64,000 nucleotides of DNA, taken from positions 124,001 through 188,000 of IMG/VR virus record IMGVR_UViG_3300010403_000705. One strand, written 5' to 3'. The notes beneath the pieces were generated by a model. That model worked only from the letters and a program-made list of their open reading frames with translations, was not told the DNA's origin and did not search any database. The first letter of the stretch is position 1. Each line of letters begins with the position of its first letter. Both the position numbers and the translations under genes were made by a program. This document shows, one piece after another, positions 334 to 17,853 of the stretch.

Positions 334-1074
334 ATGTATAACCTAGATCAAATTACGAAGATGGCGTATATGTATGAAAATGTATGCTTATCTTTTACTA
401 AAGAAAGTCGTATTGTAAAATTACCTAACGATAAGTACCGTGTACTTTCTGAAAAAGGTAAAAATCTAGGTACTTCTAATTCAAAAGCCGAGGCTAAAAC
501 AAGATTAAAACAAATAGAATATTTTAAGCATAAAGATGATAATAAGGCAGAAGATAGTCAACATTTAGACTTAACTAAAACAGATGAATTTTCTTACTCA
601 GCTATTATGCGATGTTTAAGACAACAAGCTTCAAAAGAACAAGTGGTGGATTTTTTGAAACTCTTTAAGAAAGAGTTTGATAGAGCTGTGAAAAATAAGT
701 TACAAAGACCAGAAAAAATAGCTCTACAAAATTCTTTAATAAAATTAAACAAGATTCATCCAATAAAAATAAATAGAAAATTAGTTAAAACAGCGGCTAT
801 TAGTGAATTAGGAGATCCTATATGGGTTGGAAAATATCTAGCGGATATTATTAGATTTAGTTTAAATAGAATATCTGCTGACAAACGTCCTCTGGCATTG
901 AATAGATTAAGAAATAAAATTTATAATATGAATGAAAATGAGATTGGATCCAAGAATATGCCAGCCACCTCTTCTATGGGGCAATCCATTACTTTCGTCA
1001 AACATGTGCTATTTAATCATGATCCACAATATGTACGAGCTGTGTTAAATAACATAACTAGGAATTTGGTATGA
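334..1074 (+). CDS. putative head-associated protein
   Basis: 246 aa; small basic module IVKLPNDKYRVLSEKGKNLG...RLKQIEYFKH; NKAED and VKTAA motifs like neighbouring head-region proteins. Confidence 0.55.
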   Translation: MYNLDQITKMAYMYENVCLSFTKESRIVKLPNDKYRVLSEKGKNLGTSNSKAEAKTRLKQIEYFKHKDDNKAEDSQHLDLTKTDEFSYSAIMRCLRQQASKEQVVDFLKLFKKEFDRAVKNKLQRPEKIALQNSLIKLNKIHPIKINRKLVKTAAISELGDPIWVGKYLADIIRFSLNRISADKRPLALNRLRNKIYNMNENEIGSKNMPATSSMGQSITFVKHVLFNHDPQYVRAVLNNITRNLV

Positions 1075-1802
1075 TTCAAAAGCTACAAAAAGTTACTAAC
1101 GGTTTATATCGAGGTGGCGCCCCAACTCCTAAAGATGTGCTATGGCTCAAAGAGAATTTACATATTAATAAAATAATAAGTTTAGATCAAATGGCAGGTA
1201 CTAAAATTAATCGTGTATGTGAGATGTTACATATACAACATATTAATTTACCTATTGATAGCTCTCGCCAATCATTATTAAATGTGCTACAACATGATTT
1301 AAAAAAATTATTATTAAACAATGGACCTACTTATATCCATTGTCAAGCAGGCAAAGATCGCACAGGTTTAATTATCGCTTTATTCAAATGTAAATATATG
1401 AATGTTGATCCAGAAGTATCTATCAAAGAAGCTAAATCTTTAGGTTTTGGAATTGGAATTGATCCTCGTATTACTCAATTATATGAAAAGATAATTAGAA
1501 AATGCAAACCATCTAGAGATATAAATAATTCAGATATAGTCTCTAATGAAAGAGAATATAAAAACGATAACCAGGATTCTTTCTTAGAAACAACGTATCA
1601 AGGATCTTTTTCAACATATTTAGATACCACTATACAAAATTCTATGGATGATGCATATAATTATATGAACGTACAAGTCTATGAGCCAATAAAAATGCAT
1701 CAATCTAAGAATAATATACCGCAAGTAGGAATATTTAATAACGATGCTGGAGTAAAAGGTTTTGGTCCTACTGAAAATTATGGTGGGTTTTTTTATGATT
1801 AA
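1071..1802 (+). CDS. protein tyrosine / dual-specificity phosphatase (CX5R family)
   Basis: Intact P-loop YIHCQAGKDRTG (HCxxGxxRT) and N-terminal LYRGGAP segment typical of DSP/PTP domains; low-complexity C-terminal tail. Confidence 0.88.
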   Translation: MIQKLQKVTNGLYRGGAPTPKDVLWLKENLHINKIISLDQMAGTKINRVCEMLHIQHINLPIDSSRQSLLNVLQHDLKKLLLNNGPTYIHCQAGKDRTGLIIALFKCKYMNVDPEVSIKEAKSLGFGIGIDPRITQLYEKIIRKCKPSRDINNSDIVSNEREYKNDNQDSFLETTYQGSFSTYLDTTIQNSMDDAYNYMNVQVYEPIKMHQSKNNIPQVGIFNNDAGVKGFGPTENYGGFFYD

Positions 1803-2445
1803 AAAATCTTATTCAGTTCAAATGACATATGATGTGTCAGATTCAGAGAAGCTACAAGCAGAGCGCGCCTTATTATGTTTTAATCATGTATTAAAATTAT
1901 TGGACATTGCTTCTAATCATTTAGATATTATGAAAACGCCATTCAAAAATAATCCAGAGATGTCTCCCGAAGAAGTAATGAAAGCTCGTGCGGCTATTAG
2001 AAGATTTAGGGATAAATCTATTGAAAATTTTAATGAATTTAAAATAGCTTCTTTTAAGTGTGTGAATGTAATGCAAATTTTTTCATCAGATACTCAAACA
2101 CTAAAATTAATGAAATCATTTATTTCTTCTATTGATGACTTAGAAGTAAAAGTCAATGATTTTGCAGACTTATTTAATGATTTGGAAGATAAAGATTTTC
2201 CAAAAAATGTTATTACTTGTATTGAAGGTATTCAAAAGCAATGTGAAGAGATTGACGAAATAGTAGATGAAAGAGTGAAATCACATATTCAATCTAATAT
2301 CTTAGCTAAAAATTGGGTAGATACAGTTAGTGATGATTTGCAGATGAGAGTGCAAAAAAAAACTCCGTTAATACTAGATCTTTTTAATAAAAGACAAGAT
2401 CAACTAAATAACATAATAAAAGAGAAATCACAATTAGGTAATTAA
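1795..2445 (+). CDS. hypothetical helical protein
   Basis: Track ORF 1762..2445; ATG 1795 overlapping the upstream stop (ATGATTAA) preferred. Confidence 0.7.
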   Translation: MIKKSYSVQMTYDVSDSEKLQAERALLCFNHVLKLLDIASNHLDIMKTPFKNNPEMSPEEVMKARAAIRRFRDKSIENFNEFKIASFKCVNVMQIFSSDTQTLKLMKSFISSIDDLEVKVNDFADLFNDLEDKDFPKNVITCIEGIQKQCEEIDEIVDERVKSHIQSNILAKNWVDTVSDDLQMRVQKKTPLILDLFNKRQDQLNNIIKEKSQLGN

Positions 2446-2558
2446 ATTGGTAATAATATCATATACGGATAGGACCATACTATATTTTAGTAAATTGTAG
2501 TAATAATTCCCTATAATAATTGATACTTATTGTGATTCTCTCAAATGGAGAGTATATA

Positions 2559-2720
2559 ATGTTTATAAAACATGGTGATGGAAAAATAATGACTGTTATT
2601 GACGAAGAAGAATTAACTGATAAACAAAAAAAAGCAGTTGATGATTTATCTAAAAAATTAGTAAAACAATCTTATAATGATCGGGCTGATTCTTCAACAG
2701 AGAAGAATTCAGGGAGATAA
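2559..2720 (+). CDS. small hypothetical protein (53 aa)
   Basis: GGAG SD at 2547-2550 then ATG 2559 (MFIKHGDGKIM...), in frame with the track ORF. Confidence 0.65.
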   Translation: MFIKHGDGKIMTVIDEEELTDKQKKAVDDLSKKLVKQSYNDRADSSTEKNSGR

Positions 2721-2726
2721 TATAAT

Positions 2727-5700
2727 ATGACATTTATTAAATTAGGTGAATTTATTGAAATTAACAGAGTAGAAAATACTGAATCTTGTATTCCTGCCGT
2801 TAGTGCTGAAGTATTAGAAAATTTTAAAAAAATTGCAATGAACTTAAAAAAAGTTGCTCCAAGAGCAGAAGATTTTTTATATTTTTCTGCAGTTATGATG
2901 CACGCCGCTGAAGCTTCTGGACTTAATGATGATGGCACGCCTAAATTAAATTCTAAAGGTGAAGAAGTTCAAGTTGGCTGGGATAAAAAAAATGGTACTT
3001 GGCGATGGACAACTAACGATCCTAATATTAGACCATATAAAAATTCTAATGGTGATATTTTTCCAGAGGAAGAATTAGTTAAAGCATATAAAAAATGGAT
3101 ACATAAGCCTTTATGTGTTGATCACAAATCTAGTTCAGTTGATCATACAAGAGGATTTATTGTTGATACATACTATGATAGGAATTTAAAAAGAGTTATT
3201 GCGTTATGCGCTTTAGATAAAGCTAATTATCCAGATTTAGCAAGAAAAATTTCAACAGGAATGCAAACTTGCGTATCTATGGGAACTGCTGTAGGACGAG
3301 CTATTTGTACAGAAGAAGGTTGTCATCGTGTAGCTCGTGCTGAATCAGATTTTTGTGAGCACATGAAGCGTAAGACATGCTATGGTGAAATTAACATTGA
3401 TTTAAATCCTATTGAATTATCAATTGTTGTTAATGGCGCTGATCCAAAAGCAAATATTAAGCACATTATCGCTTCTGCTCATACACTTAATAGTTATATT
3501 GAAACTAAACAAAAAGAACTTAATAAATTAGCAGAACAAGAATTTATAGCTAATTTAACATTCAATAATGATAGTGATAGTAATAATACAATAACTAATA
3601 TTAGTGTTAGGTCTGGTTCTTTGGATAGTTTTAAAAAAGATTTAGAAAAAGCTATTGATGATTATCAATCATTAAATTCTTCAATACAAGAAGAAAATAT
3701 TAATTTAGATACTAATGATCTTGCATTTAATCAATCATCTGGCACTGTTGCGATGGACGAATCTCAAATTTCTAACACTGATTCTGGATTAGCACCACCT
3801 CATGCAAGATATGCATCACAAAAGATATTAGATGCAAATTCTATTAAAGAATTACGTGAAATAACAGCCACCATTGAATATAAATTAAATTATATGAAAG
3901 ATAGTTTAAATAAGTTAGCAAATTCTATAAATATACACGAGGAAATCATGCCTTCAAAAGAAATAAATAAAAAGGGTTATTACCTAGGAACGGAAGAGCC
4001 CACCCCTGGTCAGCCTAAATATCCAGTAGATAAAGGTCACATGACTTATGAAGAGGATAAGCATTTACATGGTCAAAAACCATTTCCTGACACGGGTCCA
4101 ATAGATGGAATGCATCCTGGTGTAGAAAGCGCAGGCGTTTCTGAATTAGAACGTAAAAAAATGTTAGCTCGTGCTGAGGCAGAAGAAAGAGCAATCCGCC
4201 GCCAAGCAATAGTTAATCTTGCTAAACAAGCTTTAGAAGATAAAAAAGCACAAGCTTTAGAAGATAAAAAAGCTTATTACGGTAATGGAGATGAAAAAAA
4301 TCCTGGCTTCCCAACTCCCGGCAAACCTAAATATCCAGTAGATAAAGGTCACATGACTTATGAAGAGGATAAGCATTTACATGGTCAAAAACCATTTCCA
4401 GGTGTTGGCGCAGTAGATGGATTACATCCAAGTCCAGAATCAGCTGAAGTATCTGATGAGTTAAAACGTAAAGAATTACTGCATAGAGCAAATACACTAC
4501 ATGGTAGATTTGTAAGAGCAGCTAAGAATGATGGTACTAGAGACTTAGATAATAGTGCTTGGGAAATCCGCTTAGGTGATAAGTTATTGTTAACTGCATC
4601 TGTAAAAGATCTTTCTGGTGGACGATCAGAAATGATGTATGATAGTATCAATACTGCTGAATTTGGGCAAAGACTACTAGAAAAAGTAAAAGTATATGGA
4701 GCTGACAGAGTGCGTTCCTTGGTAAAAAGTGGTCAAGAAACACCGGCGCCTGCTGCACCTCCGGCTGATGCTGCTCCAGCCGTTCCGCCAGAAACAACAC
4801 CTCCAACTGAAACTCCTACCCCTAATGGAGAAGATACTGGTAAAAGTGGAGATCCAAAAGAATCAGCCATAGAATTATCTGAGAAAGTTAGAGATGTAAG
4901 TTCAGATTTAGTTGAAGCTGTAAGAGCTTTAACTGGTGAACAAGCCGAAATGGGTGCTGATATGGGTGCAGCACCTGAGATGGCAGCCACAGCTTCTGAT
5001 TTCAATACCGAACACATGAATGCTTTAAGAGGTGAACTTAATGAATCTCTTACAAGTGCTATGAAAGAAGTTATTGCAGAACTTAATGACCACCAACAAG
5101 AATTAGACATGATAGTTGGTATGTATGATAAGGGCGCAGTAGTTGCTTCAAATGAAGATTTTATTAATACTATTGTAAATGACGCTTTTAATGAAGCTAA
5201 AACTGCAGTTGCCAATGGTTTCAGATTAATGACTGCCTTTGTTAAATACGCTCGTGGCACCAAAGCCATTGTCAAACGTGCAGAAATAGAAGCAGAGCTA
5301 CAGGCATTAGCAGAGGGAGGAGATACTTCGATGAATTCAGAGATTGGTAGTGATGAAGATTTAATGAATCTTATACAAGATACAAATTCAGATTTAAATT
5401 CTGTCCAAGAATTAATGTTTGAGGACACAGATGATGATACAGGTACTGATTTAGAAGGTGGAGATGATTCATTAGAGTCTTTAGAAGAACAGTCGCTTGA
5501 GTTACCTGAAGAAGAACTTACAAATAGTGAAGATCCTCTTGATTTAGAATCTTTACCTACTGATGATAATGATTTAATGGCAAAACCAGAAGAATTAAAA
5601 GATCTACAAGTTAAACCAGGTACTACTGTTCAAATAACAGCAAACTTGCAAACAAAACAAGGACGCGCTGTCCTTCGTGCCAAATTAGCGGCAGATGCTT

Positions 5701-6407
5701 TAGGTAAACCAGATGACGGTCAACTTCAAGACATGTCGAAAGCTAAGTTTAGTGATATGCTAGATGAAGCAGATAGTTTAACCAATGGACAAATTAAAGG
5801 ATTAGACACTAAGCCTTCAGATAATATGGCTTATGTAGAAACTTTACCAGAAGTTAATAAAGCCATGATGGATCTAGCCAAGGCTCCACCAAAAGTACGT
5901 AAAGAGGCGGAAGCAATTCACAGATTAGTCAGCGAAGGCAAACTTGATCCATCAGATTTAGAAGCTTTAGTGGCAGAAGGTCTGGATAAAGATGCTGTGT
6001 CATACTATAAAAAATATTATGGACAAACTGATGGAGGTAGTGAATTTGCAAGTGAGTTAGTTAAAGAGCATGTAAAAGCTCAATTAGAGGATGAGTTAAA
6101 TAAATATAGAATTAAATTAGCTAGGGCTTATGAAGTAGCATATGATATGGTTGAACGCGGATTATGTCATAATGATAAAATAGCTATCTCTTCACAAGTA
6201 GATGAGATTATGAAATTTAACGATGATAGTTTTGATACTCTTAAAAGAGTTGTCGCAAGACATGCTCCTATATTACGTAAAGAAGCTGGACGTATGCCAC
6301 AAGTTGGAATAATTGGATCTGGTGAAAGTAACACATCAGTAACCCCAGAAGACGATTGGTCGCTATTATCAGCAGCATTTGCTAAGACTTCTACAAGGAT
6401 GTTTTAA
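2727..6407 (+). CDS. prohead (capsid maturation) serine protease fused to scaffolding protein
   Basis: N-terminal ~250 aa has clan-SH / HK97-type protease motifs PLCVDH, CVSMG and ELSIVVNGADPKA plus a C-x4-C...CEH insert; remainder acidic, helical, repeat-containing; upstream of capsid gene. Confidence 0.8.
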   Translation: MTFIKLGEFIEINRVENTESCIPAVSAEVLENFKKIAMNLKKVAPRAEDFLYFSAVMMHAAEASGLNDDGTPKLNSKGEEVQVGWDKKNGTWRWTTNDPNIRPYKNSNGDIFPEEELVKAYKKWIHKPLCVDHKSSSVDHTRGFIVDTYYDRNLKRVIALCALDKANYPDLARKISTGMQTCVSMGTAVGRAICTEEGCHRVARAESDFCEHMKRKTCYGEINIDLNPIELSIVVNGADPKANIKHIIASAHTLNSYIETKQKELNKLAEQEFIANLTFNNDSDSNNTITNISVRSGSLDSFKKDLEKAIDDYQSLNSSIQEENINLDTNDLAFNQSSGTVAMDESQISNTDSGLAPPHARYASQKILDANSIKELREITATIEYKLNYMKDSLNKLANSINIHEEIMPSKEINKKGYYLGTEEPTPGQPKYPVDKGHMTYEEDKHLHGQKPFPDTGPIDGMHPGVESAGVSELERKKMLARAEAEERAIRRQAIVNLAKQALEDKKAQALEDKKAYYGNGDEKNPGFPTPGKPKYPVDKGHMTYEEDKHLHGQKPFPGVGAVDGLHPSPESAEVSDELKRKELLHRANTLHGRFVRAAKNDGTRDLDNSAWEIRLGDKLLLTASVKDLSGGRSEMMYDSINTAEFGQRLLEKVKVYGADRVRSLVKSGQETPAPAAPPADAAPAVPPETTPPTETPTPNGEDTGKSGDPKESAIELSEKVRDVSSDLVEAVRALTGEQAEMGADMGAAPEMAATASDFNTEHMNALRGELNESLTSAMKEVIAELNDHQQELDMIVGMYDKGAVVASNEDFINTIVNDAFNEAKTAVANGFRLMTAFVKYARGTKAIVKRAEIEAELQALAEGGDTSMNSEIGSDEDLMNLIQDTNSDLNSVQELMFEDTDDDTGTDLEGGDDSLESLEEQSLELPEEELTNSEDPLDLESLPTDDNDLMAKPEELKDLQVKPGTTVQITANLQTKQGRAVLRAKLAADALGKPDDGQLQDMSKAKFSDMLDEADSLTNGQIKGLDTKPSDNMAYVETLPEVNKAMMDLAKAPPKVRKEAEAIHRLVSEGKLDPSDLEALVAEGLDKDAVSYYKKYYGQTDGGSEFASELVKEHVKAQLEDELNKYRIKLARAYEVAYDMVERGLCHNDKIAISSQVDEIMKFNDDSFDTLKRVVARHAPILRKEAGRMPQVGIIGSGESNTSVTPEDDWSLLSAAFAKTSTRMF
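3948..6407 (+). CDS. putative nested in-frame scaffolding protein (819 aa) from internal Met408
   Basis: GAGGA 3939-3943 then AATC then in-frame ATG 3948; repeat region starts just after this Met. Confidence 0.5.
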   Translation: MPSKEINKKGYYLGTEEPTPGQPKYPVDKGHMTYEEDKHLHGQKPFPDTGPIDGMHPGVESAGVSELERKKMLARAEAEERAIRRQAIVNLAKQALEDKKAQALEDKKAYYGNGDEKNPGFPTPGKPKYPVDKGHMTYEEDKHLHGQKPFPGVGAVDGLHPSPESAEVSDELKRKELLHRANTLHGRFVRAAKNDGTRDLDNSAWEIRLGDKLLLTASVKDLSGGRSEMMYDSINTAEFGQRLLEKVKVYGADRVRSLVKSGQETPAPAAPPADAAPAVPPETTPPTETPTPNGEDTGKSGDPKESAIELSEKVRDVSSDLVEAVRALTGEQAEMGADMGAAPEMAATASDFNTEHMNALRGELNESLTSAMKEVIAELNDHQQELDMIVGMYDKGAVVASNEDFINTIVNDAFNEAKTAVANGFRLMTAFVKYARGTKAIVKRAEIEAELQALAEGGDTSMNSEIGSDEDLMNLIQDTNSDLNSVQELMFEDTDDDTGTDLEGGDDSLESLEEQSLELPEEELTNSEDPLDLESLPTDDNDLMAKPEELKDLQVKPGTTVQITANLQTKQGRAVLRAKLAADALGKPDDGQLQDMSKAKFSDMLDEADSLTNGQIKGLDTKPSDNMAYVETLPEVNKAMMDLAKAPPKVRKEAEAIHRLVSEGKLDPSDLEALVAEGLDKDAVSYYKKYYGQTDGGSEFASELVKEHVKAQLEDELNKYRIKLARAYEVAYDMVERGLCHNDKIAISSQVDEIMKFNDDSFDTLKRVVARHAPILRKEAGRMPQVGIIGSGESNTSVTPEDDWSLLSAAFAKTSTRMF
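4014..4399 (+). repeat. 74-bp perfect direct repeat (4014-4087 and 4326-4399)
   Basis: Both copies read cctaaatatccagtagataaaggtcacatgacttatgaagaggataagcatttacatggtcaaaaaccatttcc (PKYPVDKGHMTYEEDKHLHGQKPFP). Confidence 0.97.
4226..4273 (+). repeat. 24-bp perfect tandem duplication
   Basis: acaagctttagaagataaaaaagc x2, encoding QALEDKKA twice. Confidence 0.95.
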
Positions 6408-6424: not shown

Positions 6425-7129
6425 ATGAGAAATAAAAGTGTATCAGATTTTGTCGCTGCCTCTATGGATGCAGTATTAAAGAGTGCGACACACCAATCTA
6501 TGTTTAACAACACATATAAATTTGCATCACAGCAATGTGAAAAATGTCATAAAACTATGGAAGAATGTTCATGTGATAGTAATAGCGCAGATGATAATGA
6601 TGTGAAAAAGAATTCAGATTCATCTAGTGATAGTAGCTCTAGTGATTCTAGCAGTGCTTTTGATGGCATACTAGATACAAATGACGTATCAGATAAAGAA
6701 GAAGATTGCACTGAAGAAATGGAATCATCTGCTCTTGATGTAGCAATAGATAGTTTACTTACAGCGTCCGCTGCTCTCGATCGTGCAGGATTAGAAAGAG
6801 GATCTTCTCTCAGTTTGAAACTAGCATCATTGGTAGTAGAAGCTAAGAAAAAAGAAGATAGCAAAAAGAAAGATTCTAAAAAAAGTAACAGTGATTCTAA
6901 AAAGAAAAGCGATTCTAATGATGCTAGAGCCAAGAAAAAGAAAGAAGAAGATATGAAGAAAAAGAAGGAAGAAGCGGCAAAAGCTAAGAAATTAAAAGAT
7001 TCTAATGACGCTAGAGCCAAGAAAAAGAAAGAAGAAGATTCTAAAAAATCTTCCTCAAGATCATCTTCATCGTCCTCTAGTTCCAGCTCTAGTAAAAGAC
7101 CTAATCCATTTCTAAAAAAAAGTAAATAG
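6425..7129 (+). CDS. low-complexity acidic/basic head-region protein
   Basis: 234 aa; Ser/Asp-rich middle, helical AALDRAGL motif, Lys/Ser-rich tail; AAGGA SD. Confidence 0.7.
   Translation: MRNKSVSDFVAASMDAVLKSATHQSMFNNTYKFASQQCEKCHKTMEECSCDSNSADDNDVKKNSDSSSDSSSSDSSSAFDGILDTNDVSDKEEDCTEEMESSALDVAIDSLLTASAALDRAGLERGSSLSLKLASLVVEAKKKEDSKKKDSKKSNSDSKKKSDSNDARAKKKKEEDMKKKKEEAAKAKKLKDSNDARAKKKKEEDSKKSSSRSSSSSSSSSSSKRPNPFLKKSK
6911..7039 (+). repeat. 42-bp direct repeat (6911-6952, 6998-7039), one mismatch
   Basis: gattctaatga(t/c)gctagagccaagaaaaagaaagaagaagat = DSNDARAKKKKEED twice. Confidence 0.9.
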
Positions 7130-7173: not shown

Positions 7174-7395
7174 ATGTTTAAAATTAGCAGCTCCGAAGAA
7201 GAACTTTATCGTTCTATGCAAAATAAAATGTGTTCTAACCAATTAGAAAATAAATACAGTTTTGATAAAATTTCTAGAGCTGCTGATTATCTAAATTCTG
7301 CTGCTTCAATTTTTGATCAAGCTGGAATGAAAAAAGAAGCAGCAGAAATAACTGAAGTATTATCAGATTTAGCTAAACAAATATCTTCTAAGTAA
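7174..7395 (+). CDS. small helical protein, paralog of the N-terminus of 7403..8059
   Basis: 73 aa; RAADYLNSAASIFDQAGMKKEA vs KAADYINSAIEIFEDMGMYKHA. Confidence 0.8.
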   Translation: MFKISSSEEELYRSMQNKMCSNQLENKYSFDKISRAADYLNSAASIFDQAGMKKEAAEITEVLSDLAKQISSK

Positions 7396-7402
7396 GGCAA
7401 TA

Positions 7403-10810: not shown

Positions 10811-10818
10811 AAGGGTTT

Positions 10819-11973
10819 ATGTCTGATAAATTAAATTTAATTAAAAAATACGCACAACAAACTGAAGATATACCTATTCCAACTAGAAAATCTCCTAAAA
10901 CTAAACAAGTCTCACAACAGAATGTAGATTCCAATATACCAGTAGCAAAAAAAATGGGACCAACTATTAAGGAACGTCTTCAAAATATAGTACCAGGATT
11001 TGCTTCCAAAAAAAATGCGCCAGGTAACTCTGCGCAGCAAATGGCAGATGCTATTAGTGCAGTTAAAGAAATGCAAACTGCAATGCAAAACTTAGCACAA
11101 ACAGTAATTACAGATGCGGAGTCTGGCACTATGGCATATAAACCAAAAGATGCCACTCAACCAGGAGCTAGTGATGAAGTAAAAACATCTAAAAAAAGTT
11201 TTAATGATTTTATTGCTGAGCAATATTTAGGTGGTTTAGACGAAGATAAGAAAGGTGTAGAATGGACCAAAGATACGCATGTAGTAACTTTACCAGGCAA
11301 GCAAAAAACACAAACAGACATTTATGAATTAGATGTTGTTATGGATACTTTGCGTAGAGTAGGTGCAAGTACTAAAGAATTTACAGTAGACGGTAAATGG
11401 GATTTTAGAACAGATAATGCATTAAGAAATATAATGGGTTTTGCTTATGCTTTATTACAATTAGAAGGTGATTTTGGACTAGAAAATAATATTTATACTT
11501 TTGATCACTGGAAAAATTTTAATAAAGCTTTATCTGAGTATAAAATAGAAAATGGAATAGTAAAACTTTCAGCGGCACATAAAATAACAAGAGCCAACGC
11601 TATCACTAAACATTTGAGAGCAATTAGTAAATTATATAATCATTTTAGACAACAAGTATTGGCTAGACCAGAATTTAGACCCACTATAGAAGGAAAAAGA
11701 CCTTTTGATAGGTATACGACACAAGGTTCTAATAAAAATGTTTTAACAGCACCAGAGGAACAAATGTCAAAATCAGATGCTATCAAAATTCCGCTTAACA
11801 CACCTTATTCTGCGCCTAATTTACCTAATAAAAAATTAGATTATATTCCAATTAAAGCACTACTTAATAGAAGCGAGTACATAAAATGGATGGTTAATTA
11901 CGCTGGTAATACAGAAGTTGCTGCTATGGATATTTTCAATAAAATTATAAAACCTAAAATTGAATTAATGTGA
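10819..11973 (+). CDS. putative internal head protein
   Basis: Track ORF 10798..11973; ATG 10819 after AAGGG preferred; begins MSDKLNLIKKYAQQ. Confidence 0.55.
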   Translation: MSDKLNLIKKYAQQTEDIPIPTRKSPKTKQVSQQNVDSNIPVAKKMGPTIKERLQNIVPGFASKKNAPGNSAQQMADAISAVKEMQTAMQNLAQTVITDAESGTMAYKPKDATQPGASDEVKTSKKSFNDFIAEQYLGGLDEDKKGVEWTKDTHVVTLPGKQKTQTDIYELDVVMDTLRRVGASTKEFTVDGKWDFRTDNALRNIMGFAYALLQLEGDFGLENNIYTFDHWKNFNKALSEYKIENGIVKLSAAHKITRANAITKHLRAISKLYNHFRQQVLARPEFRPTIEGKRPFDRYTTQGSNKNVLTAPEEQMSKSDAIKIPLNTPYSAPNLPNKKLDYIPIKALLNRSEYIKWMVNYAGNTEVAAMDIFNKIIKPKIELM

Positions 11974-11981
11974 AGGATACT

Positions 11982-13517
11982 ATGTCTTTTTTATATGATT
12001 TATATAATGAGTCTATGAATGATTTTCTTTTTAAAAAAACTGCTCAAAACATACCACCTATATCTCCTAATGAAGTTGCTAAAAAATTAGTTAGTAGACT
12101 AGAAAGAGAAATATCGGGTATACCAGAATCATTAAATATTTCTTCTGAAAATTCTAGTTCTGTTGATTTAGGAGTTAATCAATTACAAAATTTAGGAAAA
12201 TTACTTCAGTTCATGTCAGCTAATAAAATAAAAGTTGATAATATAAGAGTAGTATTTCCAGAGGCTGAAGCTAGTTCTTTACCAGAAGAAGAAAGACATA
12301 AACTATCTCCTGTTAGTGTCAATATGTCTAGAGATGCTGTTAGTAGAAAATGGAACACTGCCGATTTTTACACAAATCTTCCTTTATTAATAAAATATGT
12401 TACTTATCTACAAAATAAAGCTCAGGAATTAAAAAGAAATGGGGATGTCCAGGGCAGAATATTAGAAGTAATGATTGGTAAATTAATAGATTCTGTAAAT
12501 AATATCAAACCTGATTCTGGACTTTCTAGATCTCCTAAATCTAAACCAGATTTGCCTAATGAAATGCCGCAAGAAACAGTGGTAGATAATTTCGGAACAA
12601 AAATTTTCGACATTAATAATCCATATACTGATAAAGGACCACTAGTTCTAACTGGTAAAGATTTATTTAGCAAAGAATCTTTAAATGCTTGGATGAAACA
12701 GGCTCCAGAAGCACAAATTTTAGATGGACAATCATCAATAAAATTTACGGATCCTTCAGCGAATCATTGTAATATAATTAATGTGTTACACAAACGTGCT
12801 TCTAATTTAGTTAGAATTTCTTCTTCACCAGAAGATACAAAAAAATATAATTTTTATTTGAATAAGATAACCCAATTAGGACCCGCATTTACAGATCCTC
12901 AAGGGAAAGCTTGTAGTATTGGAGGGTCAACTTCACCTTCAGCAGGTCTATATAATAAACATAATTTTTTGGGACAGCCGGGGGGAGATGGTACTGGTGG
13001 TACTGGCATTTCTACACAAATTCTAGAACAACTTGTTCAAAGCCTTCCTCTTGATCCGCAAGATATAGATTTTAATCGTATTAGAAACTTTTTTAATTTA
13101 TATACTAGAGTAACATCTAGTGATAATGCACAATCTGCTATTACTTCTATGGGAACCGCTTTATATGCTATGACCACTGTTTCTGGATTAACACTAACAG
13201 GAAACCAACAAAATTTTAGGATAACTAGAAACGTACAAGAATTAATTACATGGTTAAAATCACCTGCCGGTAATAATGCTCTTCAATTTTTATATGCATT
13301 ACAGCAAATTATAACAGAGACTGGTAAAGTATTAAGAATGTTCTATAATGAATTTGTTAGAACTACTTATTCTGGAGATAGACAAACTTTAAATAGTGAG
13401 CAAAAAGCTTTAGTAGAGTCACAGATTCTGGGAGCTAATTCTATTTACTCGCAAAACCTTAGAGATATACAATCTTTAATAGCAAATTTTAAAAATACTG
13501 TGAGTACACAAAAATGA
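11982..13517 (+). CDS. putative internal head protein
   Basis: Track ORF 11970..13517; AAGGA SD then ATG 11982; FKKTAQ near the N-terminus. Confidence 0.55.
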   Translation: MSFLYDLYNESMNDFLFKKTAQNIPPISPNEVAKKLVSRLEREISGIPESLNISSENSSSVDLGVNQLQNLGKLLQFMSANKIKVDNIRVVFPEAEASSLPEEERHKLSPVSVNMSRDAVSRKWNTADFYTNLPLLIKYVTYLQNKAQELKRNGDVQGRILEVMIGKLIDSVNNIKPDSGLSRSPKSKPDLPNEMPQETVVDNFGTKIFDINNPYTDKGPLVLTGKDLFSKESLNAWMKQAPEAQILDGQSSIKFTDPSANHCNIINVLHKRASNLVRISSSPEDTKKYNFYLNKITQLGPAFTDPQGKACSIGGSTSPSAGLYNKHNFLGQPGGDGTGGTGISTQILEQLVQSLPLDPQDIDFNRIRNFFNLYTRVTSSDNAQSAITSMGTALYAMTTVSGLTLTGNQQNFRITRNVQELITWLKSPAGNNALQFLYALQQIITETGKVLRMFYNEFVRTTYSGDRQTLNSEQKALVESQILGANSIYSQNLRDIQSLIANFKNTVSTQK

Positions 13518-14599
13518 AGCGAAACTGTAATAGTGAAATAGATTTTTATGTAGATAGTATTATAGTAGAAACTATTTTAAGAGATGAAAAAATAACTAAA
13601 TATGCTGATACGACTAGTAGCGGATTAGTATTATCATTAATTGATAAAGTTAAAAATTATGTAAGTAATCATATTGATCCTGACGATAAGTCTGGCAGTC
13701 TTATTAGCATATTAGGACCTGGTGCTATATCAGTTGCTTTTAGCGCCATGGGACTGAGTTGGTTAGGCACGTTAATTGGTTTAGCTATGAGAGTATTTAA
13801 TATTAATGTAAAAGACATTATCAGTTCTATTTGGGACAAACTTAAATCTGCGATAGCTGGAGATAAACCAGTATCTTCCGCACAAGTAGATTCTTTTGTT
13901 CAAAGTGCGATACAAGAACATTCTCAGCCAGCTACACAAGAAGAAGCAGAAAAAGCTGCAAAAAATATGGAAAGCAAATCATTTTCAAAACTTGTTAGAG
14001 ATGCACAATTTGTTAAGTTAGCTATGATAAATTATGAAAATGATTCTTTTAGAAAAGAAGCTGGATTTTTTGAAATGTTCAGTAGCAGAAAATCTAAAAC
14101 TGTTTCGATTTTAACAAGAGTGCTTAGTTGGATTTTTAAGATTGCTCTAGCATCTGCTGGGCTCATGGTAGCAGGAGATGTTGTAAACAAATTTGTAGGT
14201 AGACCTAATGCCATTGATAATACTATTCAAAAAGGTAAGCCTATTGAACAACCCATAGTTCCCGCTAATATATCTAAACAAAAAAAATTTTTAGTTAAAC
14301 CTACCTATAATGCTAACGAAAAATACAACACCAGAGATTCTAATTGGATAGAAAGAATATCTAATGATCCATCTTCTATTGAAAACATGTTAATATCTTT
14401 TGTTAAAGAAGTATATGAAGGATTAAACGGCAAAGAGAATATTATTAAAAGCTCACCAGCTTTTCAAATGGTTAAAAATAGAATTATTTGGTATAATCAT
14501 ACTAGTCCTAATTCACCTATGATATGGATTCCAAAATATTTTTCTTCCAAAAAACAAATTGTCGATTATTTCATTGATGATGTAGCAGAAAGGGCATAA
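13514..14599 (+). CDS. putative internal/ejection protein with hydrophobic helices
   Basis: 361 aa; TKYAD and RKEAG motifs, each upstream of an apolar segment (GSLISILGPGAISVAFSAMGLSWLGTLIGLAM; VLSWIFKIALASAGLMVAG). Confidence 0.55.
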   Translation: MKRNCNSEIDFYVDSIIVETILRDEKITKYADTTSSGLVLSLIDKVKNYVSNHIDPDDKSGSLISILGPGAISVAFSAMGLSWLGTLIGLAMRVFNINVKDIISSIWDKLKSAIAGDKPVSSAQVDSFVQSAIQEHSQPATQEEAEKAAKNMESKSFSKLVRDAQFVKLAMINYENDSFRKEAGFFEMFSSRKSKTVSILTRVLSWIFKIALASAGLMVAGDVVNKFVGRPNAIDNTIQKGKPIEQPIVPANISKQKKFLVKPTYNANEKYNTRDSNWIERISNDPSSIENMLISFVKEVYEGLNGKENIIKSSPAFQMVKNRIIWYNHTSPNSPMIWIPKYFSSKKQIVDYFIDDVAERA

Positions 14600-14652: not shown

Positions 14653-15888
14653 ATGAATAAACGTAGAAGCGATGTTTTAGATAATTTCTTTAAAATAGCA
14701 CAAGAACAAGGTTTAATTTCAAATAAAAATACAACAGAAAAAACTAAACGAAAATTAGAAAAAACACACCGAGCTGATTCGTTAAGTGCCAAAGATATTG
14801 AAGAACTTTATGGAATCAAACCAGAAATGTCTAAAGGTAATCAATATACAAGAAATATTATTGAAGACGCTCATCCTACATCATATATCGCTGCTCCTTC
14901 ATATGATAAACTAAATGGTTTAGTGGAAAACGAAAATGAAAGACAAGATATTACATTACATATTTTAAATAAAGTTCCTAATGGACATCTGACTGGTCAT
15001 AAATATGCTGCAAAAGATTTAATATTATCACTAGTAAGAGTGGGTAATGATTTAGATCATAAAAATAATGATCGATTACGAATATTAGCAGATACTTGTT
15101 TGCTACAAGTTAGCCAACCAATGAAAAAAAATGCAGCTGCCGTATTGATAGCAATTCCGGTATTACTTGGATCCTTATATCTGCAACAACATTTATCATT
15201 CGTTAATGAAGGGTTTGAAAAAAATCATCAAAAAATAATTGCTGAAATAGACGATTTATTACAATCTAGTTCTTCGTGGGGAATAGGATATGATTATAAA
15301 TCAGATTTCAAAAATATGGTGCAAGATTTTAAAACTAAACTAATGAATTTTTATACACTATATAAAAAAATAGAACCTATAATTACTGATTTAGAAAAAC
15401 CAAGAACAGCAAAAGATTTAATAGAATTATCAAAACAACCACAAACAGATACAGTGGTAAAAGCTTACGGTGCCCTTAAATCCGCAGCAGACAATATGTT
15501 ACCTTATATTATTACTATTGAAAAAAACTTTGCTTCAGAAACTTATAAAACTAGACAAATAGAAGATAAAGGATTTATGTCTTCTCTAGTTGATAATCTA
15601 CAAGTTTTTCATGGAGGAAAAGGACTAGTAGCTGATGATTTTGAGGATATTGTAAGAGCTATTGATCCATACAAAAAATCTATAAATGATTTAGTTAATA
15701 TATTAAAAAATGCTGAATCTATTGAGAAATCAGCACAGCAGAAAATACAGGAAGCATCTGCATCAGAAACAAATACTCCTAATGAATTTGATTCTACAAC
15801 TCAAAAAGTTGAACCAACAATGGAAAAATCAGATGTTGATCAACAAGTGGAAGATTTAGAAAAAGATCTTGCCGGTGGACTATTATAA
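14653..15888 (+). CDS. putative internal/ejection protein
   Basis: 411 aa; N-terminus paralogous to 9704..10810; KKNA followed directly by hydrophobic AAVLIAIPVLLGSLYL. Confidence 0.55.
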   Translation: MNKRRSDVLDNFFKIAQEQGLISNKNTTEKTKRKLEKTHRADSLSAKDIEELYGIKPEMSKGNQYTRNIIEDAHPTSYIAAPSYDKLNGLVENENERQDITLHILNKVPNGHLTGHKYAAKDLILSLVRVGNDLDHKNNDRLRILADTCLLQVSQPMKKNAAAVLIAIPVLLGSLYLQQHLSFVNEGFEKNHQKIIAEIDDLLQSSSSWGIGYDYKSDFKNMVQDFKTKLMNFYTLYKKIEPIITDLEKPRTAKDLIELSKQPQTDTVVKAYGALKSAADNMLPYIITIEKNFASETYKTRQIEDKGFMSSLVDNLQVFHGGKGLVADDFEDIVRAIDPYKKSINDLVNILKNAESIEKSAQQKIQEASASETNTPNEFDSTTQKVEPTMEKSDVDQQVEDLEKDLAGGLL

Positions 15889-15951: not shown

Positions 15952-15977
15952 TTAGTAAGTTAAGATGTAAGTATAGC

Positions 15978-16004
15978 GTGCCGAATTGTAAATTTATACG
16001 GCAT
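15978..16004 (+). promoter_or_regulatory. GC-rich hairpin in the leader of the decoration gene
   Basis: gtgccg (15978-83) pairs with cggcat (15999-16004), about 22 nt before ATG 16027. Confidence 0.45.
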
Positions 16005-16026
16005 TAAAAGATTATAGGAAAATGAA

Positions 16027-16725
16027 ATGGCTTTAAAATTATTACAACCAGGCGTACAACCTTTAGGTCAGTATGATGGTCTCGATACAGAATTTTTAAC
16101 ATTAAAAGGTGGAGAAATTGTTAGTTTCACTTCAGTTCCTGTTTCTGGATCTGATAAAGCGGCTAGAGACGTACTTGATGGATATGTAAATCCAGGTTCT
16201 GTTCAAAAAAGAGTAGCAGTAACCAGAAACGTTCCCACTACAAAAAGACCTCTTATGTTATCTGATGATGGTATTACTGGATATGGAACTTTATTTGGTT
16301 CCATAATTGGTGGTAGTTTAGGTGGACAAGTAGTTGGAGTTACTATAGGACCACACACTTCTTTAGGTTCAGGTAAAGTAACATTATGGGAAAAACCTGG
16401 TATCTATGCTGTATCTTTAGATGCATGTGATACATCATCTACTGATGGATTACAGCCTACTAATACAACTTTAGATACAGGAGCGGCATTAACTTGGGTT
16501 CCAGCTAGTACTTCTGGGGGTCGGCTAACTCCAGTTGGTAGTGCAGCGGCTGCTGGTAACACAGTGGTTGTGGGTCGCTTTATTGATTTTGAAAGTAATG
16601 GTTCTCTTGTTACTACTCCAAGTAGTTTAGTAGCGGCACTTAATGCACCAGATGGCACATTAGGGGGAGCACTTCCAAAACAATTTGCTTTTGCTACTTT
16701 CTATTTTAATCCTCCATCTGCTTAA
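16027..16725 (+). CDS. capsid decoration/cement-like protein, paralog 2
   Basis: 232 aa, Gly/Thr/Val-rich, immediately upstream of the major capsid gene (position of lambda gpD-type genes). Confidence 0.7.
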   Translation: MALKLLQPGVQPLGQYDGLDTEFLTLKGGEIVSFTSVPVSGSDKAARDVLDGYVNPGSVQKRVAVTRNVPTTKRPLMLSDDGITGYGTLFGSIIGGSLGGQVVGVTIGPHTSLGSGKVTLWEKPGIYAVSLDACDTSSTDGLQPTNTTLDTGAALTWVPASTSGGRLTPVGSAAAAGNTVVVGRFIDFESNGSLVTTPSSLVAALNAPDGTLGGALPKQFAFATFYFNPPSA

Positions 16726-16737
16726 TTAATTTATATT

Positions 16738-16822
16738 CTAGCCGAGGGGCTGGAATAATTCTCTTCGGGGAAACCCCTCAACTTTTAATAATGTTTAGCT
16801 GGTAAAACTGGCAAAAATTCCA
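16738..16822 (+). ncRNA. candidate structured cis-regulatory RNA in the capsid gene leader
   Basis: GC-rich island with gagggg/cccctc stem, cUUCGg hairpin, alternative GGG-GAAA-CCC hairpin and further stems with G-U pairs, ending just before the AGGAG SD. Confidence 0.55.
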
Positions 16823-16839
16823 TTTAGGAGAAAATTTAT

Positions 16840-17853
16840 ATGAATATGTTCAATAATCAAAACACAATGAACGCCTCCTCTTTAAAAGATATGTTGCAAC
16901 AACTAGTAAAATATGCAGCAGTTTTAGAAGAGAATCAACCAGCCAATATGGGTCTAGCTGGTCAAGTTTCATTAAGTGATGATAAAAGAGATGAGTTAAT
17001 TTCACGTGCTATTGTTACTCAAGATGGTAAAATTGCTTTAGCACAAGCTATGGCAAATCCAATTAGAAGAAACTTAGATTATCATGGTATTGCACGACGT
17101 GCACTTGTTGTAGATCCTTTACCTCAAGCAGCTACACCAAGTTACGATAGAGATATTGATGTCGCAGCTGTTGTTATTTCATCCAATGGTACTGGACCAG
17201 AATCTAGGGTGTTTGGTGATAGAGTAGTTGTTCCTACATTTGAAATATATGCAAATCCTACTGTTAGAATTTCTGAAGTAAGACGTCGTAGATTTAATGT
17301 TATTGATAGAGCTGTACAAAAAGCCCGTCAAGAAATTATGGCTCAAGAAGATGCAAATATCTTTGCAGCTATGGATGCCGCTGCTTCAGTAGAAAATACT
17401 TTAACTGATATTGCAGATGCAGGTCTTCTAAAAAGAGATCTTGTAGAAATAAAACAACAAATTGATCGTTGGGATTTAGTAACCACTAAATATTTTATGA
17501 ATATCAATGAATTCACTGATATGCTAAAATGGGGTTCCGGTGGTGGTCAAGGTGTTGGCGGTGGAGATTTTGATCCTGTGACTATGAGAGAAGTATTACA
17601 AACTGGTTTATATGCTCATATTTGGGGTACAGATATTATGGTAAGTAAAATTGTACCACCAGGCACAATTTATGGAGCAGCAGATCCTGAATTCGTGGGA
17701 GTAATGCCAATTAGACAAGATATCGAAGTTCTTCCTGCAGACGAACCAAAACAACTAAAACTTGGTTGGGTAGTTTCAGAAGAAATTGGAATCGGAATTG
17801 TAAATCCAAGAGGCGTCGCTGCCGGTAGAAAGAGTGTTGTTCTAGGCGCTTAA
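16840..17853 (+). CDS. major capsid protein (HK97-like fold)
   Basis: 337 aa; strong SD; downstream of protease/scaffold and decoration genes, followed by a terminator; LVVDPLPQ E-loop-like segment and terminal GWVVSEEIGIGIVNPRGV strand typical of HK97-fold capsids. Confidence 0.88.
   Translation: MNMFNNQNTMNASSLKDMLQQLVKYAAVLEENQPANMGLAGQVSLSDDKRDELISRAIVTQDGKIALAQAMANPIRRNLDYHGIARRALVVDPLPQAATPSYDRDIDVAAVVISSNGTGPESRVFGDRVVVPTFEIYANPTVRISEVRRRRFNVIDRAVQKARQEIMAQEDANIFAAMDAAASVENTLTDIADAGLLKRDLVEIKQQIDRWDLVTTKYFMNINEFTDMLKWGSGGGQGVGGGDFDPVTMREVLQTGLYAHIWGTDIMVSKIVPPGTIYGAADPEFVGVMPIRQDIEVLPADEPKQLKLGWVVSEEIGIGIVNPRGVAAGRKSVVLGA

What the first reader, a model, noticed from the sequence alone, without database searches (positions are those of the whole stretch)
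334..17853. Candidate head-cargo system: recurrent x-x-Ala motifs mark head-region proteins for Ala-specific maturation
Seen: most genes from 334 to the capsid gene carry (K/R)-x-A near the N-terminus or at compositional boundaries: VKTA-A (334), RYA-S, KLA-E, KKA-Y, KEA-G (2727), KFA-S (6425), KQA, KIA (7403), KIA-S, KKA-Q (9704), KKYA-Q (10819), KKTA-Q (11982), KYA-D, KEA-G (13514), KIA-Q, KYA-A, KNA-A (14653), KYA-A near capsid residue 25, KIA (19791). A second variant N-x-(A/S)-(D/E) recurs in 334, 1071, 6425 and 7403 (related DRAD in 2559). The N-termini of sheath, tube, TMP and baseplate proteins lack it. Known: jumbo-phage prohead proteases process many internal proteins at short motifs, usually after Glu (T4 gp21, phiKZ gp175). 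Inference: here cleavage is after Ala and releases about ten packaged proteins. Caveat: K-x-A arises by chance a few times per Lys-rich protein, so only the positional bias is informative.
Basis: partly seen in the sequence, partly recalled or inferred. Interest (0 to 1): 0.8.

Follow-up and report, generated by a model that had tools for sequence, protein, structure and literature searches.

The report
Conserved Lys-x-Ala tag on head proteins
In this uncultivated 433-kb relative of Bacillus phage G, about a dozen unrelated head-module proteins share a short, strongly conserved hydrophobic-x-Lys-x-Ala tag, most likely the cutting and address signal of the phage's capsid-maturation protease, which would let the packaged proteins of such giant phages be predicted from sequence alone.

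Summary
The main observation is real. In the head module (window 334-17853, plus portal and one gene just upstream), 10 of 16 ORFs carry [LIVMFY]-x-K-x-A in their first 45 residues, against 1.2 expected. The rest of the window has 2 of 29 against 1.2 expected.

K-x-A ranks first of 1600 two-residue patterns. Across 20-65 orthologs per family (often 25-55% identical), 23 K-x-A pairs are conserved in head families, 0 in tail families and about 3 by chance.

The tags sit 12-35 residues from the N-terminus and are usually followed by hypervariable linkers. The protease-scaffold fusion (2727-6407) carries at least six.

Its protease domain models confidently. Its best structural matches are T4 gp21 and herpesvirus assemblins.

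Published N-terminal sequencing shows that phage G capsid protein is cut after Ala27, before Gln28. That matches the tag's Ala-Gln end, so cleavage after Ala is plausible but not shown here.

- The second motif, N-x-(A/S)-(D/E), is chance.
- The capsid's main cut is probably at Ala68|Gln69, not near residue 25.
- Ala-specific cleavage is already known for herpesvirus assemblins.

Packaging of the tagged proteins remains inference. Verdict: a new variant of a known kind of system.

The parts
2727..6407 (+). Protease-scaffold fusion, 1226 aa. The protease domain spans about residues 45-250, with invariant His133 and Ser184. The rest is scaffold-like.
   Evidence: phrog_18299 'head maturation protease', E=1e-11. 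34% identity to phage G gp19, E=9e-25. AF2 model pLDDT 87.6. Top PDB fold hits are T4 gp21, EBV protease and PrV pUL26N, prob 0.98-0.99. Invariant residues.
2829..2837 (+). Tag K35-I-A37 (FKKIA|M) ahead of the protease domain.
   Evidence: Conserved in 94-97% of orthologs and across 50%-identity representatives as F-x-K-x-A. Phage G gp19 has LVKTA|A at the same place.
3525..3533 (+). Tag K267-L-A269 (LNKLA|E) just after the protease domain; a candidate release site.
   Evidence: Conserved in 82-86% of orthologs and followed by an indel-rich stretch. Phage G gp19 has LLKIA|S and Tunturi_5 gp331 has RKKVA|S at the same position.
4725..4733 (+). Scaffold tag K667-S-G669 (LVKSG|Q; K-[SN]-A in most orthologs), followed by a Pro/Ala-rich hypervariable linker.
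5244..5282 (+). Two scaffold tags: FVKYA|RGTKAIVKRA|E (K840-A842 and K850-A852).
   Evidence: 94-97% conserved.
6279..6287 (+). Scaffold tag K1185-E-A1187 (LRKEA|G), 39 residues from the C-terminus, ahead of a conserved C-terminal tail; a candidate maturation (M-like) site.
   Evidence: 83% conserved. The tail ...DDWSxLSAAFAKTSKRMF is conserved.
334..1074 (+). 246-aa protein of unknown function with an internal tag K152-T-A154 (nt 787-795, LVKTA|A).
   Evidence: K in 56/57 and A in 55/57 orthologs.
6425..7129 (+). 234-aa Ser/Asp/Lys-rich protein. The conserved 34-residue N-terminal peptide ends in K32-F-A34|S (nt 6518-6526), followed by a hypervariable acidic region.
   Evidence: K and A in 36/36 orthologs.
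7174..8059 (+). Paralog pair 7174-7395 and 7403-8059, with tags K32-I-S34 (nt 7267-7275; K-I-A in most orthologs) and K63-I-A65 (nt 7589-7597).
   Evidence: hhalign probability 99.4% between the two families. Conservation.
9704..10810 (+). 368-aa candidate cargo with tags at A21, A36 and A82 (nt 9758-9766, 9803-9811, 9941-9949).
   Evidence: 85-100% conserved. Its N-terminal part is a paralog of 14653.
10798..11973 (+). Candidate cargo; the likely true start is 10819. Tag LIKKYA|Q (nt 10846-10854), followed by a Pro/Ala/Gly-rich hypervariable linker.
   Evidence: 46/50 orthologs have phi-x-K-x-[AG] near the N-terminus, against 9.8 expected.
11970..13517 (+). Candidate cargo; the likely true start is 11982. 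Tag FKKTA|Q (nt 12036-12044), followed by a variable linker.
   Evidence: K-x-[AG] near the site in 98% of 42 orthologs that are only about 27% identical overall.
13514..14599 (+). 361-aa candidate cargo with tag ITKYA|D (nt 13598-13606) and two membrane-span-like segments (residues 63-92 and 203-224).
   Evidence: K in 50/51 and A in 48/51 orthologs. Hydrophobic segments.
14653..15888 (+). 411-aa candidate cargo with tags at A16, A119 and A161 (nt 14692-14700, 15001-15009, 15127-15135). A hydrophobic segment (161-179) follows the last tag.
   Evidence: 92-98% conserved.
16840..17853 (+). Major capsid protein, 337 aa. It has tag LVKYA26|A (nt 16909-16917) and the probable main cut GKIALA68|Q69.
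   Evidence: phrog_2522, E=8e-76. 53% identity to phage G gp27. The A68|Q69 site is homologous to the sequenced phage G cut A27|Q28.
8114..8803 (+). 229-aa decoration-like protein with no tag; serves as a negative control.
   Evidence: No conserved K-x-A.
16027..16725 (+). 232-aa protein immediately upstream of the capsid gene, at the position of phage G decoration protein gp26. It has no K-x-A tag.

Best explanation
The first 18 kb of the window is the head-assembly module of an uncultivated 433-kb phage whose closest cultured relative is Bacillus phage G.

ORF 2727-6407 encodes a capsid-maturation serine protease with the T4 gp21/herpesvirus-assemblin fold, fused to a scaffold of about 950 residues.

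At least eleven unrelated protein families of the module carry one short tag, consensus [L/F/I/M]-x-K-x-A-[Q/A/S/E]. They are the portal, an unnamed 411-aa protein just upstream of the window, 334, the protease-scaffold, 6425, 7174/7403, 9704/14653, 10798, 11970, 13514 and the capsid protein.

I propose the tag is the protease's recognition site, cut after the Ala. The conserved 12-35-residue peptide ahead of it would act as a prohead-targeting propeptide, like the T4 capsid-targeting sequence.

On this model, the tagged proteins co-assemble with the scaffold inside the prohead. The protease then frees itself (K35-I-A37 and K267-L-A269) and cuts the scaffold into pieces, including a C-terminal 39-residue tail. 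It also trims portal and capsid protein (main cut probably A68|Q69) and releases about nine mature internal proteins that stay in the head.

Shown here: existence, positional enrichment, conservation and head-specificity of the tag; the protease fold.

Taken from the literature: phage G capsid protein is cut Ala|Gln.

Inferred: that the tags are cut, the exact bond, and that the tagged proteins are packaged or ejected.
For: - Positional enrichment: 10/16 against 1.2 expected, with flat controls. K.A ranks first of 1600 patterns.
- Conserved K-x-A pairs: 23 in head families, 0 in tail families, about 3 expected.
- K and A are near-invariant in families only 25-45% identical overall. P5 is hydrophobic in 81% of sites and P1' is Gln in 33%.
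- Hypervariable, indel-rich linkers start right after the tag.
- The tag occurs in obligate prohead components: capsid protein, portal and protease-scaffold.
- Tags flank the protease domain and are kept in phage G gp19 and Tunturi_5 gp331. Phage G gp20 and gp21 start with LKKTA and RKKLA.
- Protease fold: AF2 pLDDT 87.6, and the top PDB matches are T4 gp21 and herpesvirus proteases.
- The phage G capsid protein's mature N-terminus is Gln28, after Ala27 (PMC5646251). The site is 100% conserved in the window clade.
- Decoration-like proteins, TerL and the lysin lack the tag.
Against: - There is no proteomic or biochemical data for this phage.
- The one verified site in the lineage (RVALA|Q) has Ala at P3 and Arg at P5, so K-x-A is not the whole rule.
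- In the upstream 411-aa protein the tag lies at residues 3-5 (MQKTA|Q), too close to the end for a P5-P1 recognition site.
- phi-x-K-phi-A is also a plausible amphipathic-helix heptad, and the two tags flanking the protease domain lie in predicted helices.
- A small protein in the baseplate module (54184) also has a conserved LLKLA.
- The tagged proteins have no recognisable function or relatives in phage G, so packaging is inferred only from gene position and the tag.
Confidence: 0.6

Rival explanations
1. The tag is a docking helix only. It would bind the scaffold or inner shell surface to bring proteins into the prohead, without being cut.
For: The pattern phi-x-K-phi-A fits an amphipathic heptad. 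The tags at 35-37 and 267-269 lie in predicted helices. A designed coiled coil with KKIA repeats was the top weak PDB sequence hit. The MQKTAQ tag at the very N-terminus of the upstream 411-aa protein cannot offer P5-P4 residues.
Against: Near-invariance of exactly K and A/G is unlike ordinary coiled-coil positions. The hypervariable linker begins right after the tag. The lineage does cut its capsid protein after Ala, before Gln. A protease is fused to the scaffold. The tags bracket the protease domain, as release sites do in herpesviruses.
Confidence: 0.17
2. The tag is a cleavage site in another register, for example cut after the Lys as in HK97 gp5 (TFNK|S).
For: HK97's related protease cuts after Lys103 (site from established knowledge; sequence). 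Lys is the most invariant tag residue.
Against: The only mapped site in this lineage is Ala|Gln. P1' under the Lys register would be highly variable. Gln enrichment right after Ala fits the Ala register. Assemblin-fold proteases with known sites read P3 and P1: L/I-x-E, A-x-E, and x-x-A in herpesviruses.
Confidence: 0.1
3. The shared tag reflects common descent of N-terminal modules through gene duplication, not a functional signal.
For: 9704/14653 and 7174/7403 are paralog pairs.
Against: The tag also occurs in the capsid protein, portal, protease-scaffold and several families with no detectable mutual similarity. It sits at different distances from the N-terminus. Only the K and A are kept.
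Confidence: 0.04
4. It is a chance or compositional artefact of Lys- and Ala-rich helical proteins.
For: Whole-protein [KR]xA counts are only about 1.3-fold above composition.
Against: Shuffle tests, spacing controls, tail-protein controls and conservation all reject this.
Confidence: 0.02
5. Processing is done by a host protease, as staphylococcal phage 80alpha uses the host L27 protease.
For: Short N-terminal peptides removed from capsid and scaffold proteins are known for that system (from memory, not checked here).
Against: This phage encodes its own maturation protease, fused to the scaffold. The tag brackets that protease. The motif differs from the host-L27 type.
Confidence: 0.03

Closest known systems
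T4 prohead protease gp21 with capsid-targeting sequences of internal proteins
   Same: A phage serine protease of the same fold (top fold hit 5jbl). A short N-terminal peptide targets internal proteins to the prohead and is then removed. Scaffold, capsid protein and internal proteins share one short motif.
   Different: T4 cuts after Glu in L/I-x-E (PMC12991175). That motif is not enriched here. Here the tag is phi-x-K-x-A, and the protease is fused to the scaffold.
phiKZ gp175 / SPN3US gp245 giant-phage head maturation
   Same: Many head proteins carry N-terminal propeptides. Propeptides can hold several motif copies. Portal, capsid protein and ejection proteins are all processed (PMC10052503).
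   Different: The motif there is A/S/G-x-E, cut after Glu. [SAG]xE is not enriched here. There is no sequence relationship between the substrates.
Herpesvirus assemblin (UL26 protease-scaffold fusion with R and M sites)
   Same: An N-terminal protease fused to a scaffold. A release site lies right after the protease domain and a maturation site near the scaffold C-terminus. The cut is after Ala: the in vivo PrV protease ends at Ala225 (PMC4498786). Fold hits to EBV, PrV, HCMV and HSV proteases.
   Different: By my recollection the herpes consensus has V/L/I at P3 and Ser at P1'. Here P3 is Lys and P1' is mostly Gln/Ala/Ser. A Ser-His-His triad is not established here. There are many more substrates.
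Bacillus phage G gp19 protease / gp27 capsid protein
   Same: The closest cultured relative: capsid protein 53% identical and protease 34% identical. K-x-A tags flank gp19 and begin gp20 and gp21. The capsid protein is cut Ala27|Gln28.
   Different: The phage G protease is a separate 300-aa protein, not fused to a long scaffold. Its capsid protein lacks the extra 41-residue N-terminal extension. No homologs of the tagged cargo families were found in it.
HK97 gp4 protease / gp5 delta domain
   Same: A distantly related prohead protease. The best (non-significant) profile alignment puts Ser184 on catalytic Ser114. ESM Atlas neighbours carry Peptidase_S78.
   Different: There is no Pfam S78 match. 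HK97 cuts after Lys. In HK97 the scaffold function lies in the capsid protein's delta domain, and no internal cargo is known.

Membership tests
Capsid-maturation proteases of the T4 gp21 / herpesvirus assemblin fold | Protease domain adopts the gp21/assemblin fold | tested here: met
   AF2 model pLDDT 87.6, pTM 0.79. The five best PDB matches are T4 gp21 (three chains), EBV protease and PrV pUL26N, prob 0.98-0.99 and TM by target 0.51-0.53 for gp21. E-values are only 6e-3 to 2e-2.
Capsid-maturation proteases of the T4 gp21 / herpesvirus assemblin fold | Conserved catalytic Ser and His | tested here: inconclusive
   His133 and Ser184 are invariant in 56 diverse homologs and in phage G, Tunturi_5 and LR745208. 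Ser184 aligns with HK97 Ser114 only in a non-significant hhalign. No structural superposition of active sites was made.
Capsid-maturation proteases of the T4 gp21 / herpesvirus assemblin fold | Encoded in the head module between portal and capsid genes | tested here: met
   Gene order is TerL, portal..., protease-scaffold..., capsid protein.
Pfam Peptidase_S78 (HK97) or S77 (T4) sequence families | Match to the family HMM above its threshold | tested here: not met
   No Pfam hit for the window protein or any of 19 homologs. No PDB sequence hit. Only ESM Atlas neighbours at rank 48 or lower carry S78/S77.
T4/phiKZ-type propeptide (capsid-targeting sequence) systems | One short motif shared by capsid protein, portal, scaffold and internal proteins, near N-termini | tested here: met
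T4/phiKZ-type propeptide (capsid-targeting sequence) systems | Motif ends in Glu (L/I-x-E or S/A/G-x-E) | tested here: not met
   Neither pattern is enriched in head N-termini. The tag ends in Ala.
T4/phiKZ-type propeptide (capsid-targeting sequence) systems | Propeptides are actually removed and mature proteins are present in the head | not testable with these tools
   The phage is uncultivated. The only related data point is the phage G capsid protein N-terminus.
Herpesvirus-type protease-scaffold fusion with release and maturation sites | Protease fused N-terminally to the scaffold, with a site after the protease domain and a site near the scaffold C-terminus | tested here: met
   One ORF of 1226 aa. 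Conserved tags at 267-269 and 1185-1187, the latter 39 residues from the end. The same fusion occurs in about 140 of the 150 best representatives and in actinophages E3, Myrna and RedWattleHog. That these sites are cleaved is not shown.
Herpesvirus-type protease-scaffold fusion with release and maturation sites | Consensus (V/L/I)-x-A|S | tested here: not met
   P1 Ala is shared, but P3 is Lys and P1' is mostly Gln/Ala/Ser/Glu.

The most novel reading that the evidence does not exclude
A large, undescribed lineage of capsid-maturation proteases has a Lys-x-Ala|Gln-type specificity. The lineage comprises 1989 representative clusters at 50% identity, includes phage G and many 400-480-kb uncultivated phages, and is mostly fused to its scaffold. 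The matching N-terminal tag would be a readable address label, so the packaged, and possibly ejected, protein set of uncultivated megaphages could be listed from genome sequence alone. That set would include membrane-active proteins such as 13514 and 14653.
Probability: 0.45. Interest if true: 0.65.

Novelty: new variant of a known kind. Interest (0 to 1): 0.58.

Why it matters
Giant uncultivated phages carry hundreds of genes of unknown function, and there is no way to purify their particles.

If a short sequence tag marks the proteins that are built into the head and trimmed by the maturation protease, genome sequence alone would tell which proteins travel with the DNA. Those proteins could then act first in the infected cell.

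The work would also define the specificity of a protease family that no curated library (Pfam, NCBIfam, PDB sequences) covers.

It adds a phage example of the herpesvirus-style protease-scaffold fusion with Ala-type sites, strengthening the evolutionary link between the two assembly systems.

The prediction is directly testable in phage G, which can be grown.

Tried and rejected
- The second motif N-x-(A/S)-(D/E) is at chance level.
- Whole-protein [KR]xA counts are only weakly informative.
- The 'KKVA-P' second site ahead of the protease domain was rejected as a tag. Its Lys is not kept across 50%-identity representatives, and Ala-Pro is an invariant part of the domain.
- KTAQ at residues 20-23 of the TMP-like ORF 44201 is not conserved.
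- Pfam, NCBIfam and PDB sequence searches on the protease and cargo found nothing.
- The first AF2 model, from a shallow alignment, was unusable at pLDDT 43. A deeper alignment of representatives fixed this.
- hhalign of the protease profile against HK97 gp4 was not significant.
- Profile comparisons of the cargo families against phage G gp15-gp54 gave no hit.
- ESM Atlas searches for 13514 and 11982 gave no credible relatives.
- Literature searches for a described K-x-A prohead-protease motif found none.
- The phage G cryo-EM/MS paper (PMC7316594) is not held. The supplements of the 2025 phage G paper are not held either.
- More distant capsid relatives (Lu11, AD1) do not show K-x-A at the aligned N-terminal position. 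Actinophages show G[LF]GR[FV]A instead. I therefore claim the tag only for the window clade and phage G.

Full report
**What the region is**

The window is about 30% G+C. It is part of IMG/VR contig IMGVR_UViG_3300010403_000705, 432,844 bp, positions 124001-188000. No phage record matches it at the DNA level.

Its capsid protein (16840-17853; phrog_2522, E=8e-76) is 53% identical to gp27 of Bacillus phage G, the closest cultured relative. It is 85-95% identical to hundreds of metagenomic proteins, many on 400-480-kb contigs.

Upstream DNA of the same contig (L082) shows this gene order:
- TerL
- portal
- a 411-aa unknown protein
- a glucosaminidase-domain protein
- a small ORF
- window ORFs 334, 1071 (Tyr phosphatase), 1762, 2520
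- 2727 (protease-scaffold)
- 6425, 7174, 7403
- 8114 (decoration-like)
- two short ORFs
- 9704, 10798, 11970, 13514, 14653
- 16027 (at the position of phage G decoration protein gp26)
- the capsid gene

The sheath (39603-42377) and the tube-like and TMP-like genes lie further downstream.

**The observation**

Total counts of [KR]xA are only slightly above composition. Position is not.

- [LIVMFY]-x-K-x-A falls in the first 45 residues of 10 of 16 head ORFs. Shuffling each protein gives 1.2, and none of 2000 shuffles reaches 10.
- The other 29 ORFs of the window give 2 against 1.2.
- Control spacings (AxK, KxxA, KA) and the T4- and phiKZ-type motifs are flat.
- Without any prior choice, K.A is the most over-represented of 1600 two-residue patterns in these N-termini (11/16 against 3.6, p=5e-5). 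L.K is third and F.K fifth.

**Conservation**

I fetched 160 related loci around the capsid and protease genes and about 75 around tail genes. I built ortholog alignments of 20-65 distinct sequences per family.

The capsid protein is about 91% identical across these loci. The proteins between protease and capsid gene are only 25-55% identical, so conservation there is informative.

Pairs of K and A two residues apart, kept in at least 80% of orthologs:

| Group | Length | Conserved K-x-A pairs |
|---|---|---|
| Head-module families | 5724 aa | 23 |
| Tail families | 6184 aa | 0 |
| TerL, lysin, decoration-like proteins | see note | 0 |
| Capsid protein | 337 aa | 3 |

Note: TerL, lysin, the two decoration-like proteins and the capsid protein were scored as one group of 1747 aa.

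In the head families, the chance expectation from the numbers of conserved K and A columns is about 3, and five control spacings give 3-7.

Per-site counts are striking in families that are otherwise poorly conserved:
- 14653: K in 49/51 and A in 49/51 orthologs
- 13514: 50/51 and 48/51
- 6425: 36/36 and 36/36
- 334: 56/57 and 55/57

In the 10798 family, 46 of 50 orthologs have the tag 8-28 residues from the start, against 9.8 expected. It is followed directly by a Pro/Ala/Gly-rich stretch that cannot be aligned.

The family-weighted profile of 21 sites gives P5 as L/F/I/M in 81%, P3 as K, P2 often aromatic or aliphatic, P1 as A (G in 6%), and P1' as Q in 33%, then A/E/S.

The second motif, N-x-(A/S)-(D/E), occurs 9 times against 9.1 expected and is mostly unconserved.

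**Who carries the tag**

These families are independent; only 7174/7403 and 9704/14653 are paralog pairs:

| Protein | Tag | Position |
|---|---|---|
| Portal | VKKYA\|Q | residue 83 |
| Upstream 411-aa protein | MQKTA\|Q | residue 5 |
| 334 | LVKTA\|A | internal, residue 154 |
| Protease-scaffold | several | see below |
| 6425 | YKFA\|S | residue 34 |
| 7174/7403 | K-I-[AS] | residues 34 (7174) and 65 (7403) |
| 9704 | three tags | residues 21, 36, 82 |
| 10798 | IKKYA\|Q | residue 19 (12 from the likely true start) |
| 11970 | FKKTA\|Q | residue 25 (21 from the likely true start) |
| 13514 | ITKYA\|D | residue 31 |
| 14653 | three tags | residues 16, 119, 161 |
| Capsid protein | LVKYA\|A | residue 26 |

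The decoration-like proteins 8114 and 16027, the phosphatase 1071, 1762, TerL and the lysin have none.

13514 has two membrane-span-like segments and 14653 has one. None of the tagged unknowns matches any family in PHROGs, Pfam, NCBIfam or the ESM Atlas.

**The protease-scaffold**

ORF 2727 matches a PHROG of head-maturation proteases and phage G gp19 (34% identity, E=9e-25). It matches no Pfam or PDB sequence.

A profile search of 1.8 billion representatives finds 1989 relatives. Nearly all of the best 150 are 1000-1600-aa fusions.

With a 56-sequence alignment the domain models at pLDDT 87.6. The five best PDB matches are T4 gp21 (three chains), Epstein-Barr virus protease and pseudorabies pUL26N (probability 0.98-0.99, but modest E-values). 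His133 and Ser184 are invariant.

One conserved tag precedes the domain (FKKIA37). One follows it (LNKLA269). Both are kept in phage G gp19, and the second also in Tunturi_5 gp331.

The scaffold part has further conserved tags at 667-669 (followed by a Pro/Ala-rich linker), 840-842, 850-852 and 1185-1187. The last is 39 residues before a conserved C-terminal tail.

This layout mirrors herpesvirus UL26, which has an N-terminal protease, a release site, the scaffold, and a maturation site near the C-terminus. Its protease ends in Ala in vivo (PMC4498786).

**Where the cut is**

No paper in the library describes a K-x-A motif for a prohead protease. One experimental anchor exists.

Hua et al. 2017 list the phage G capsid protein as 282 residues (31.2 kDa) and the mature form as 255 residues (28.2 kDa), from N-terminal sequencing (PMC5646251). 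Only a start at Gln28 gives 255 residues and 28.17 kDa. The cut is therefore EEGRVALA27|Q28AMANPIR, after Ala and before Gln.

Two qualifications follow:
- P3 of the verified site is Ala and the basic residue sits at P5, so K-x-A is not the complete rule.
- The homologous sequence in the window capsid protein, GKIALA68|Q69AMANPIR, is invariant in all 59 orthologs. The capsid propeptide is therefore probably 68 residues long. It would contain the residue-26 tag as an upstream site or address element rather than the final cut.

**Mechanism proposed**

The tagged proteins enter the prohead with the protease-scaffold. The tag and its N-terminal peptide would provide docking and then the cleavage site.

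The protease would release itself, cut the scaffold into fragments of about 45 kDa or less, trim the portal and capsid protein, and leave about nine mature internal proteins in the head.

Only the sequence-level facts and the fold are shown. Cleavage, its exact bond, and packaging or ejection are inferred.

The main rivals are a docking-only helix (the tag fits an amphipathic heptad and lies in predicted helices) and a different cleavage register, as in HK97, which cuts after Lys.

A conserved LLKLA in a 118-aa protein of the baseplate module (54184) shows the tag is not strictly confined to the head gene cluster. It is either a cargo gene placed elsewhere or a background hit.

**Verdict**

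The main observation is real, specific and conserved.

In kind it is the known propeptide-and-protease scheme of T4, phiKZ and herpesviruses, with a different, undescribed motif, in a protease lineage that no curated library covers.

Noticed in passing
window 8918-9193 and 9317-9547: Two short ORFs between the decoration-like gene and the first cargo gene. By eye they look like pieces of a GIY-YIG-type homing endonuclease, but there is no Pfam hit. The head module of the distant relative LR745208 also holds a GIY-YIG-like ORF (L163:9344-10204).
   Followed up: partly
window 1071-1802: A tyrosine/dual-specificity phosphatase (PF03162, E=8e-13) sits inside the head module without a K-x-A tag. 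Whether it is packaged is open.
   Followed up: partly
L082:6229-7212 (same contig, just upstream of the window): A protein with a glucosaminidase (peptidoglycan hydrolase) domain, PF01832 E=3e-10, lies between the portal and the protease. It has no tag.
   Followed up: partly
proteins P0137, P0138, P0145, P0160 and about 20 more: Many protease-scaffold homologs have an insertion of about 370 residues inside the protease domain at profile position ~105, matching in two stretches. These are probably inteins; ESM Atlas structural neighbours include a LAGLIDADG/Hint cluster.
   Followed up: no
window 20461-23277: A 938-aa Gly/Ser/Thr-rich protein with about eight long internal repeats (...LPLPTGA.T..LQ...), downstream of the capsid gene. 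It may be a fibre.
   Followed up: no
window 54184-54540: A 118-aa protein in the baseplate gene cluster with a conserved phi-x-K-L-A at residues 24-28 in about 17 of 20 orthologs. The same tag occurs outside the head module.
   Followed up: partly
Only one other related locus has it, so conservation of the tag could not be judged.
   Followed up: partly
window 3975-4091 and 4272-4421 (ORF 2727 residues ~417-455 and ~516-565): Two tandem copies of a His/Tyr/Pro-rich peptide (...PKYPVDKGHMTYEEDKHLHGQKPFP...). Each is preceded by KK[G/A]|YY, so they could be released as small peptides.
   Followed up: no
L244:4680-8315, L245:5079-8348, L167:5662-8349: Mycobacteriophage Myrna gp97 (annotated 'tape measure'), Gordonia phage RedWattleHog gp13 and Rhodococcus phage E3 gp77 are protease-scaffold fusions homologous to ORF 2727 (E=1e-13 to 1e-15). 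Their capsid proteins begin with a conserved G[LF]GR[FV]AK. The Myrna annotation looks wrong.
   Followed up: partly
   Followed up: yes
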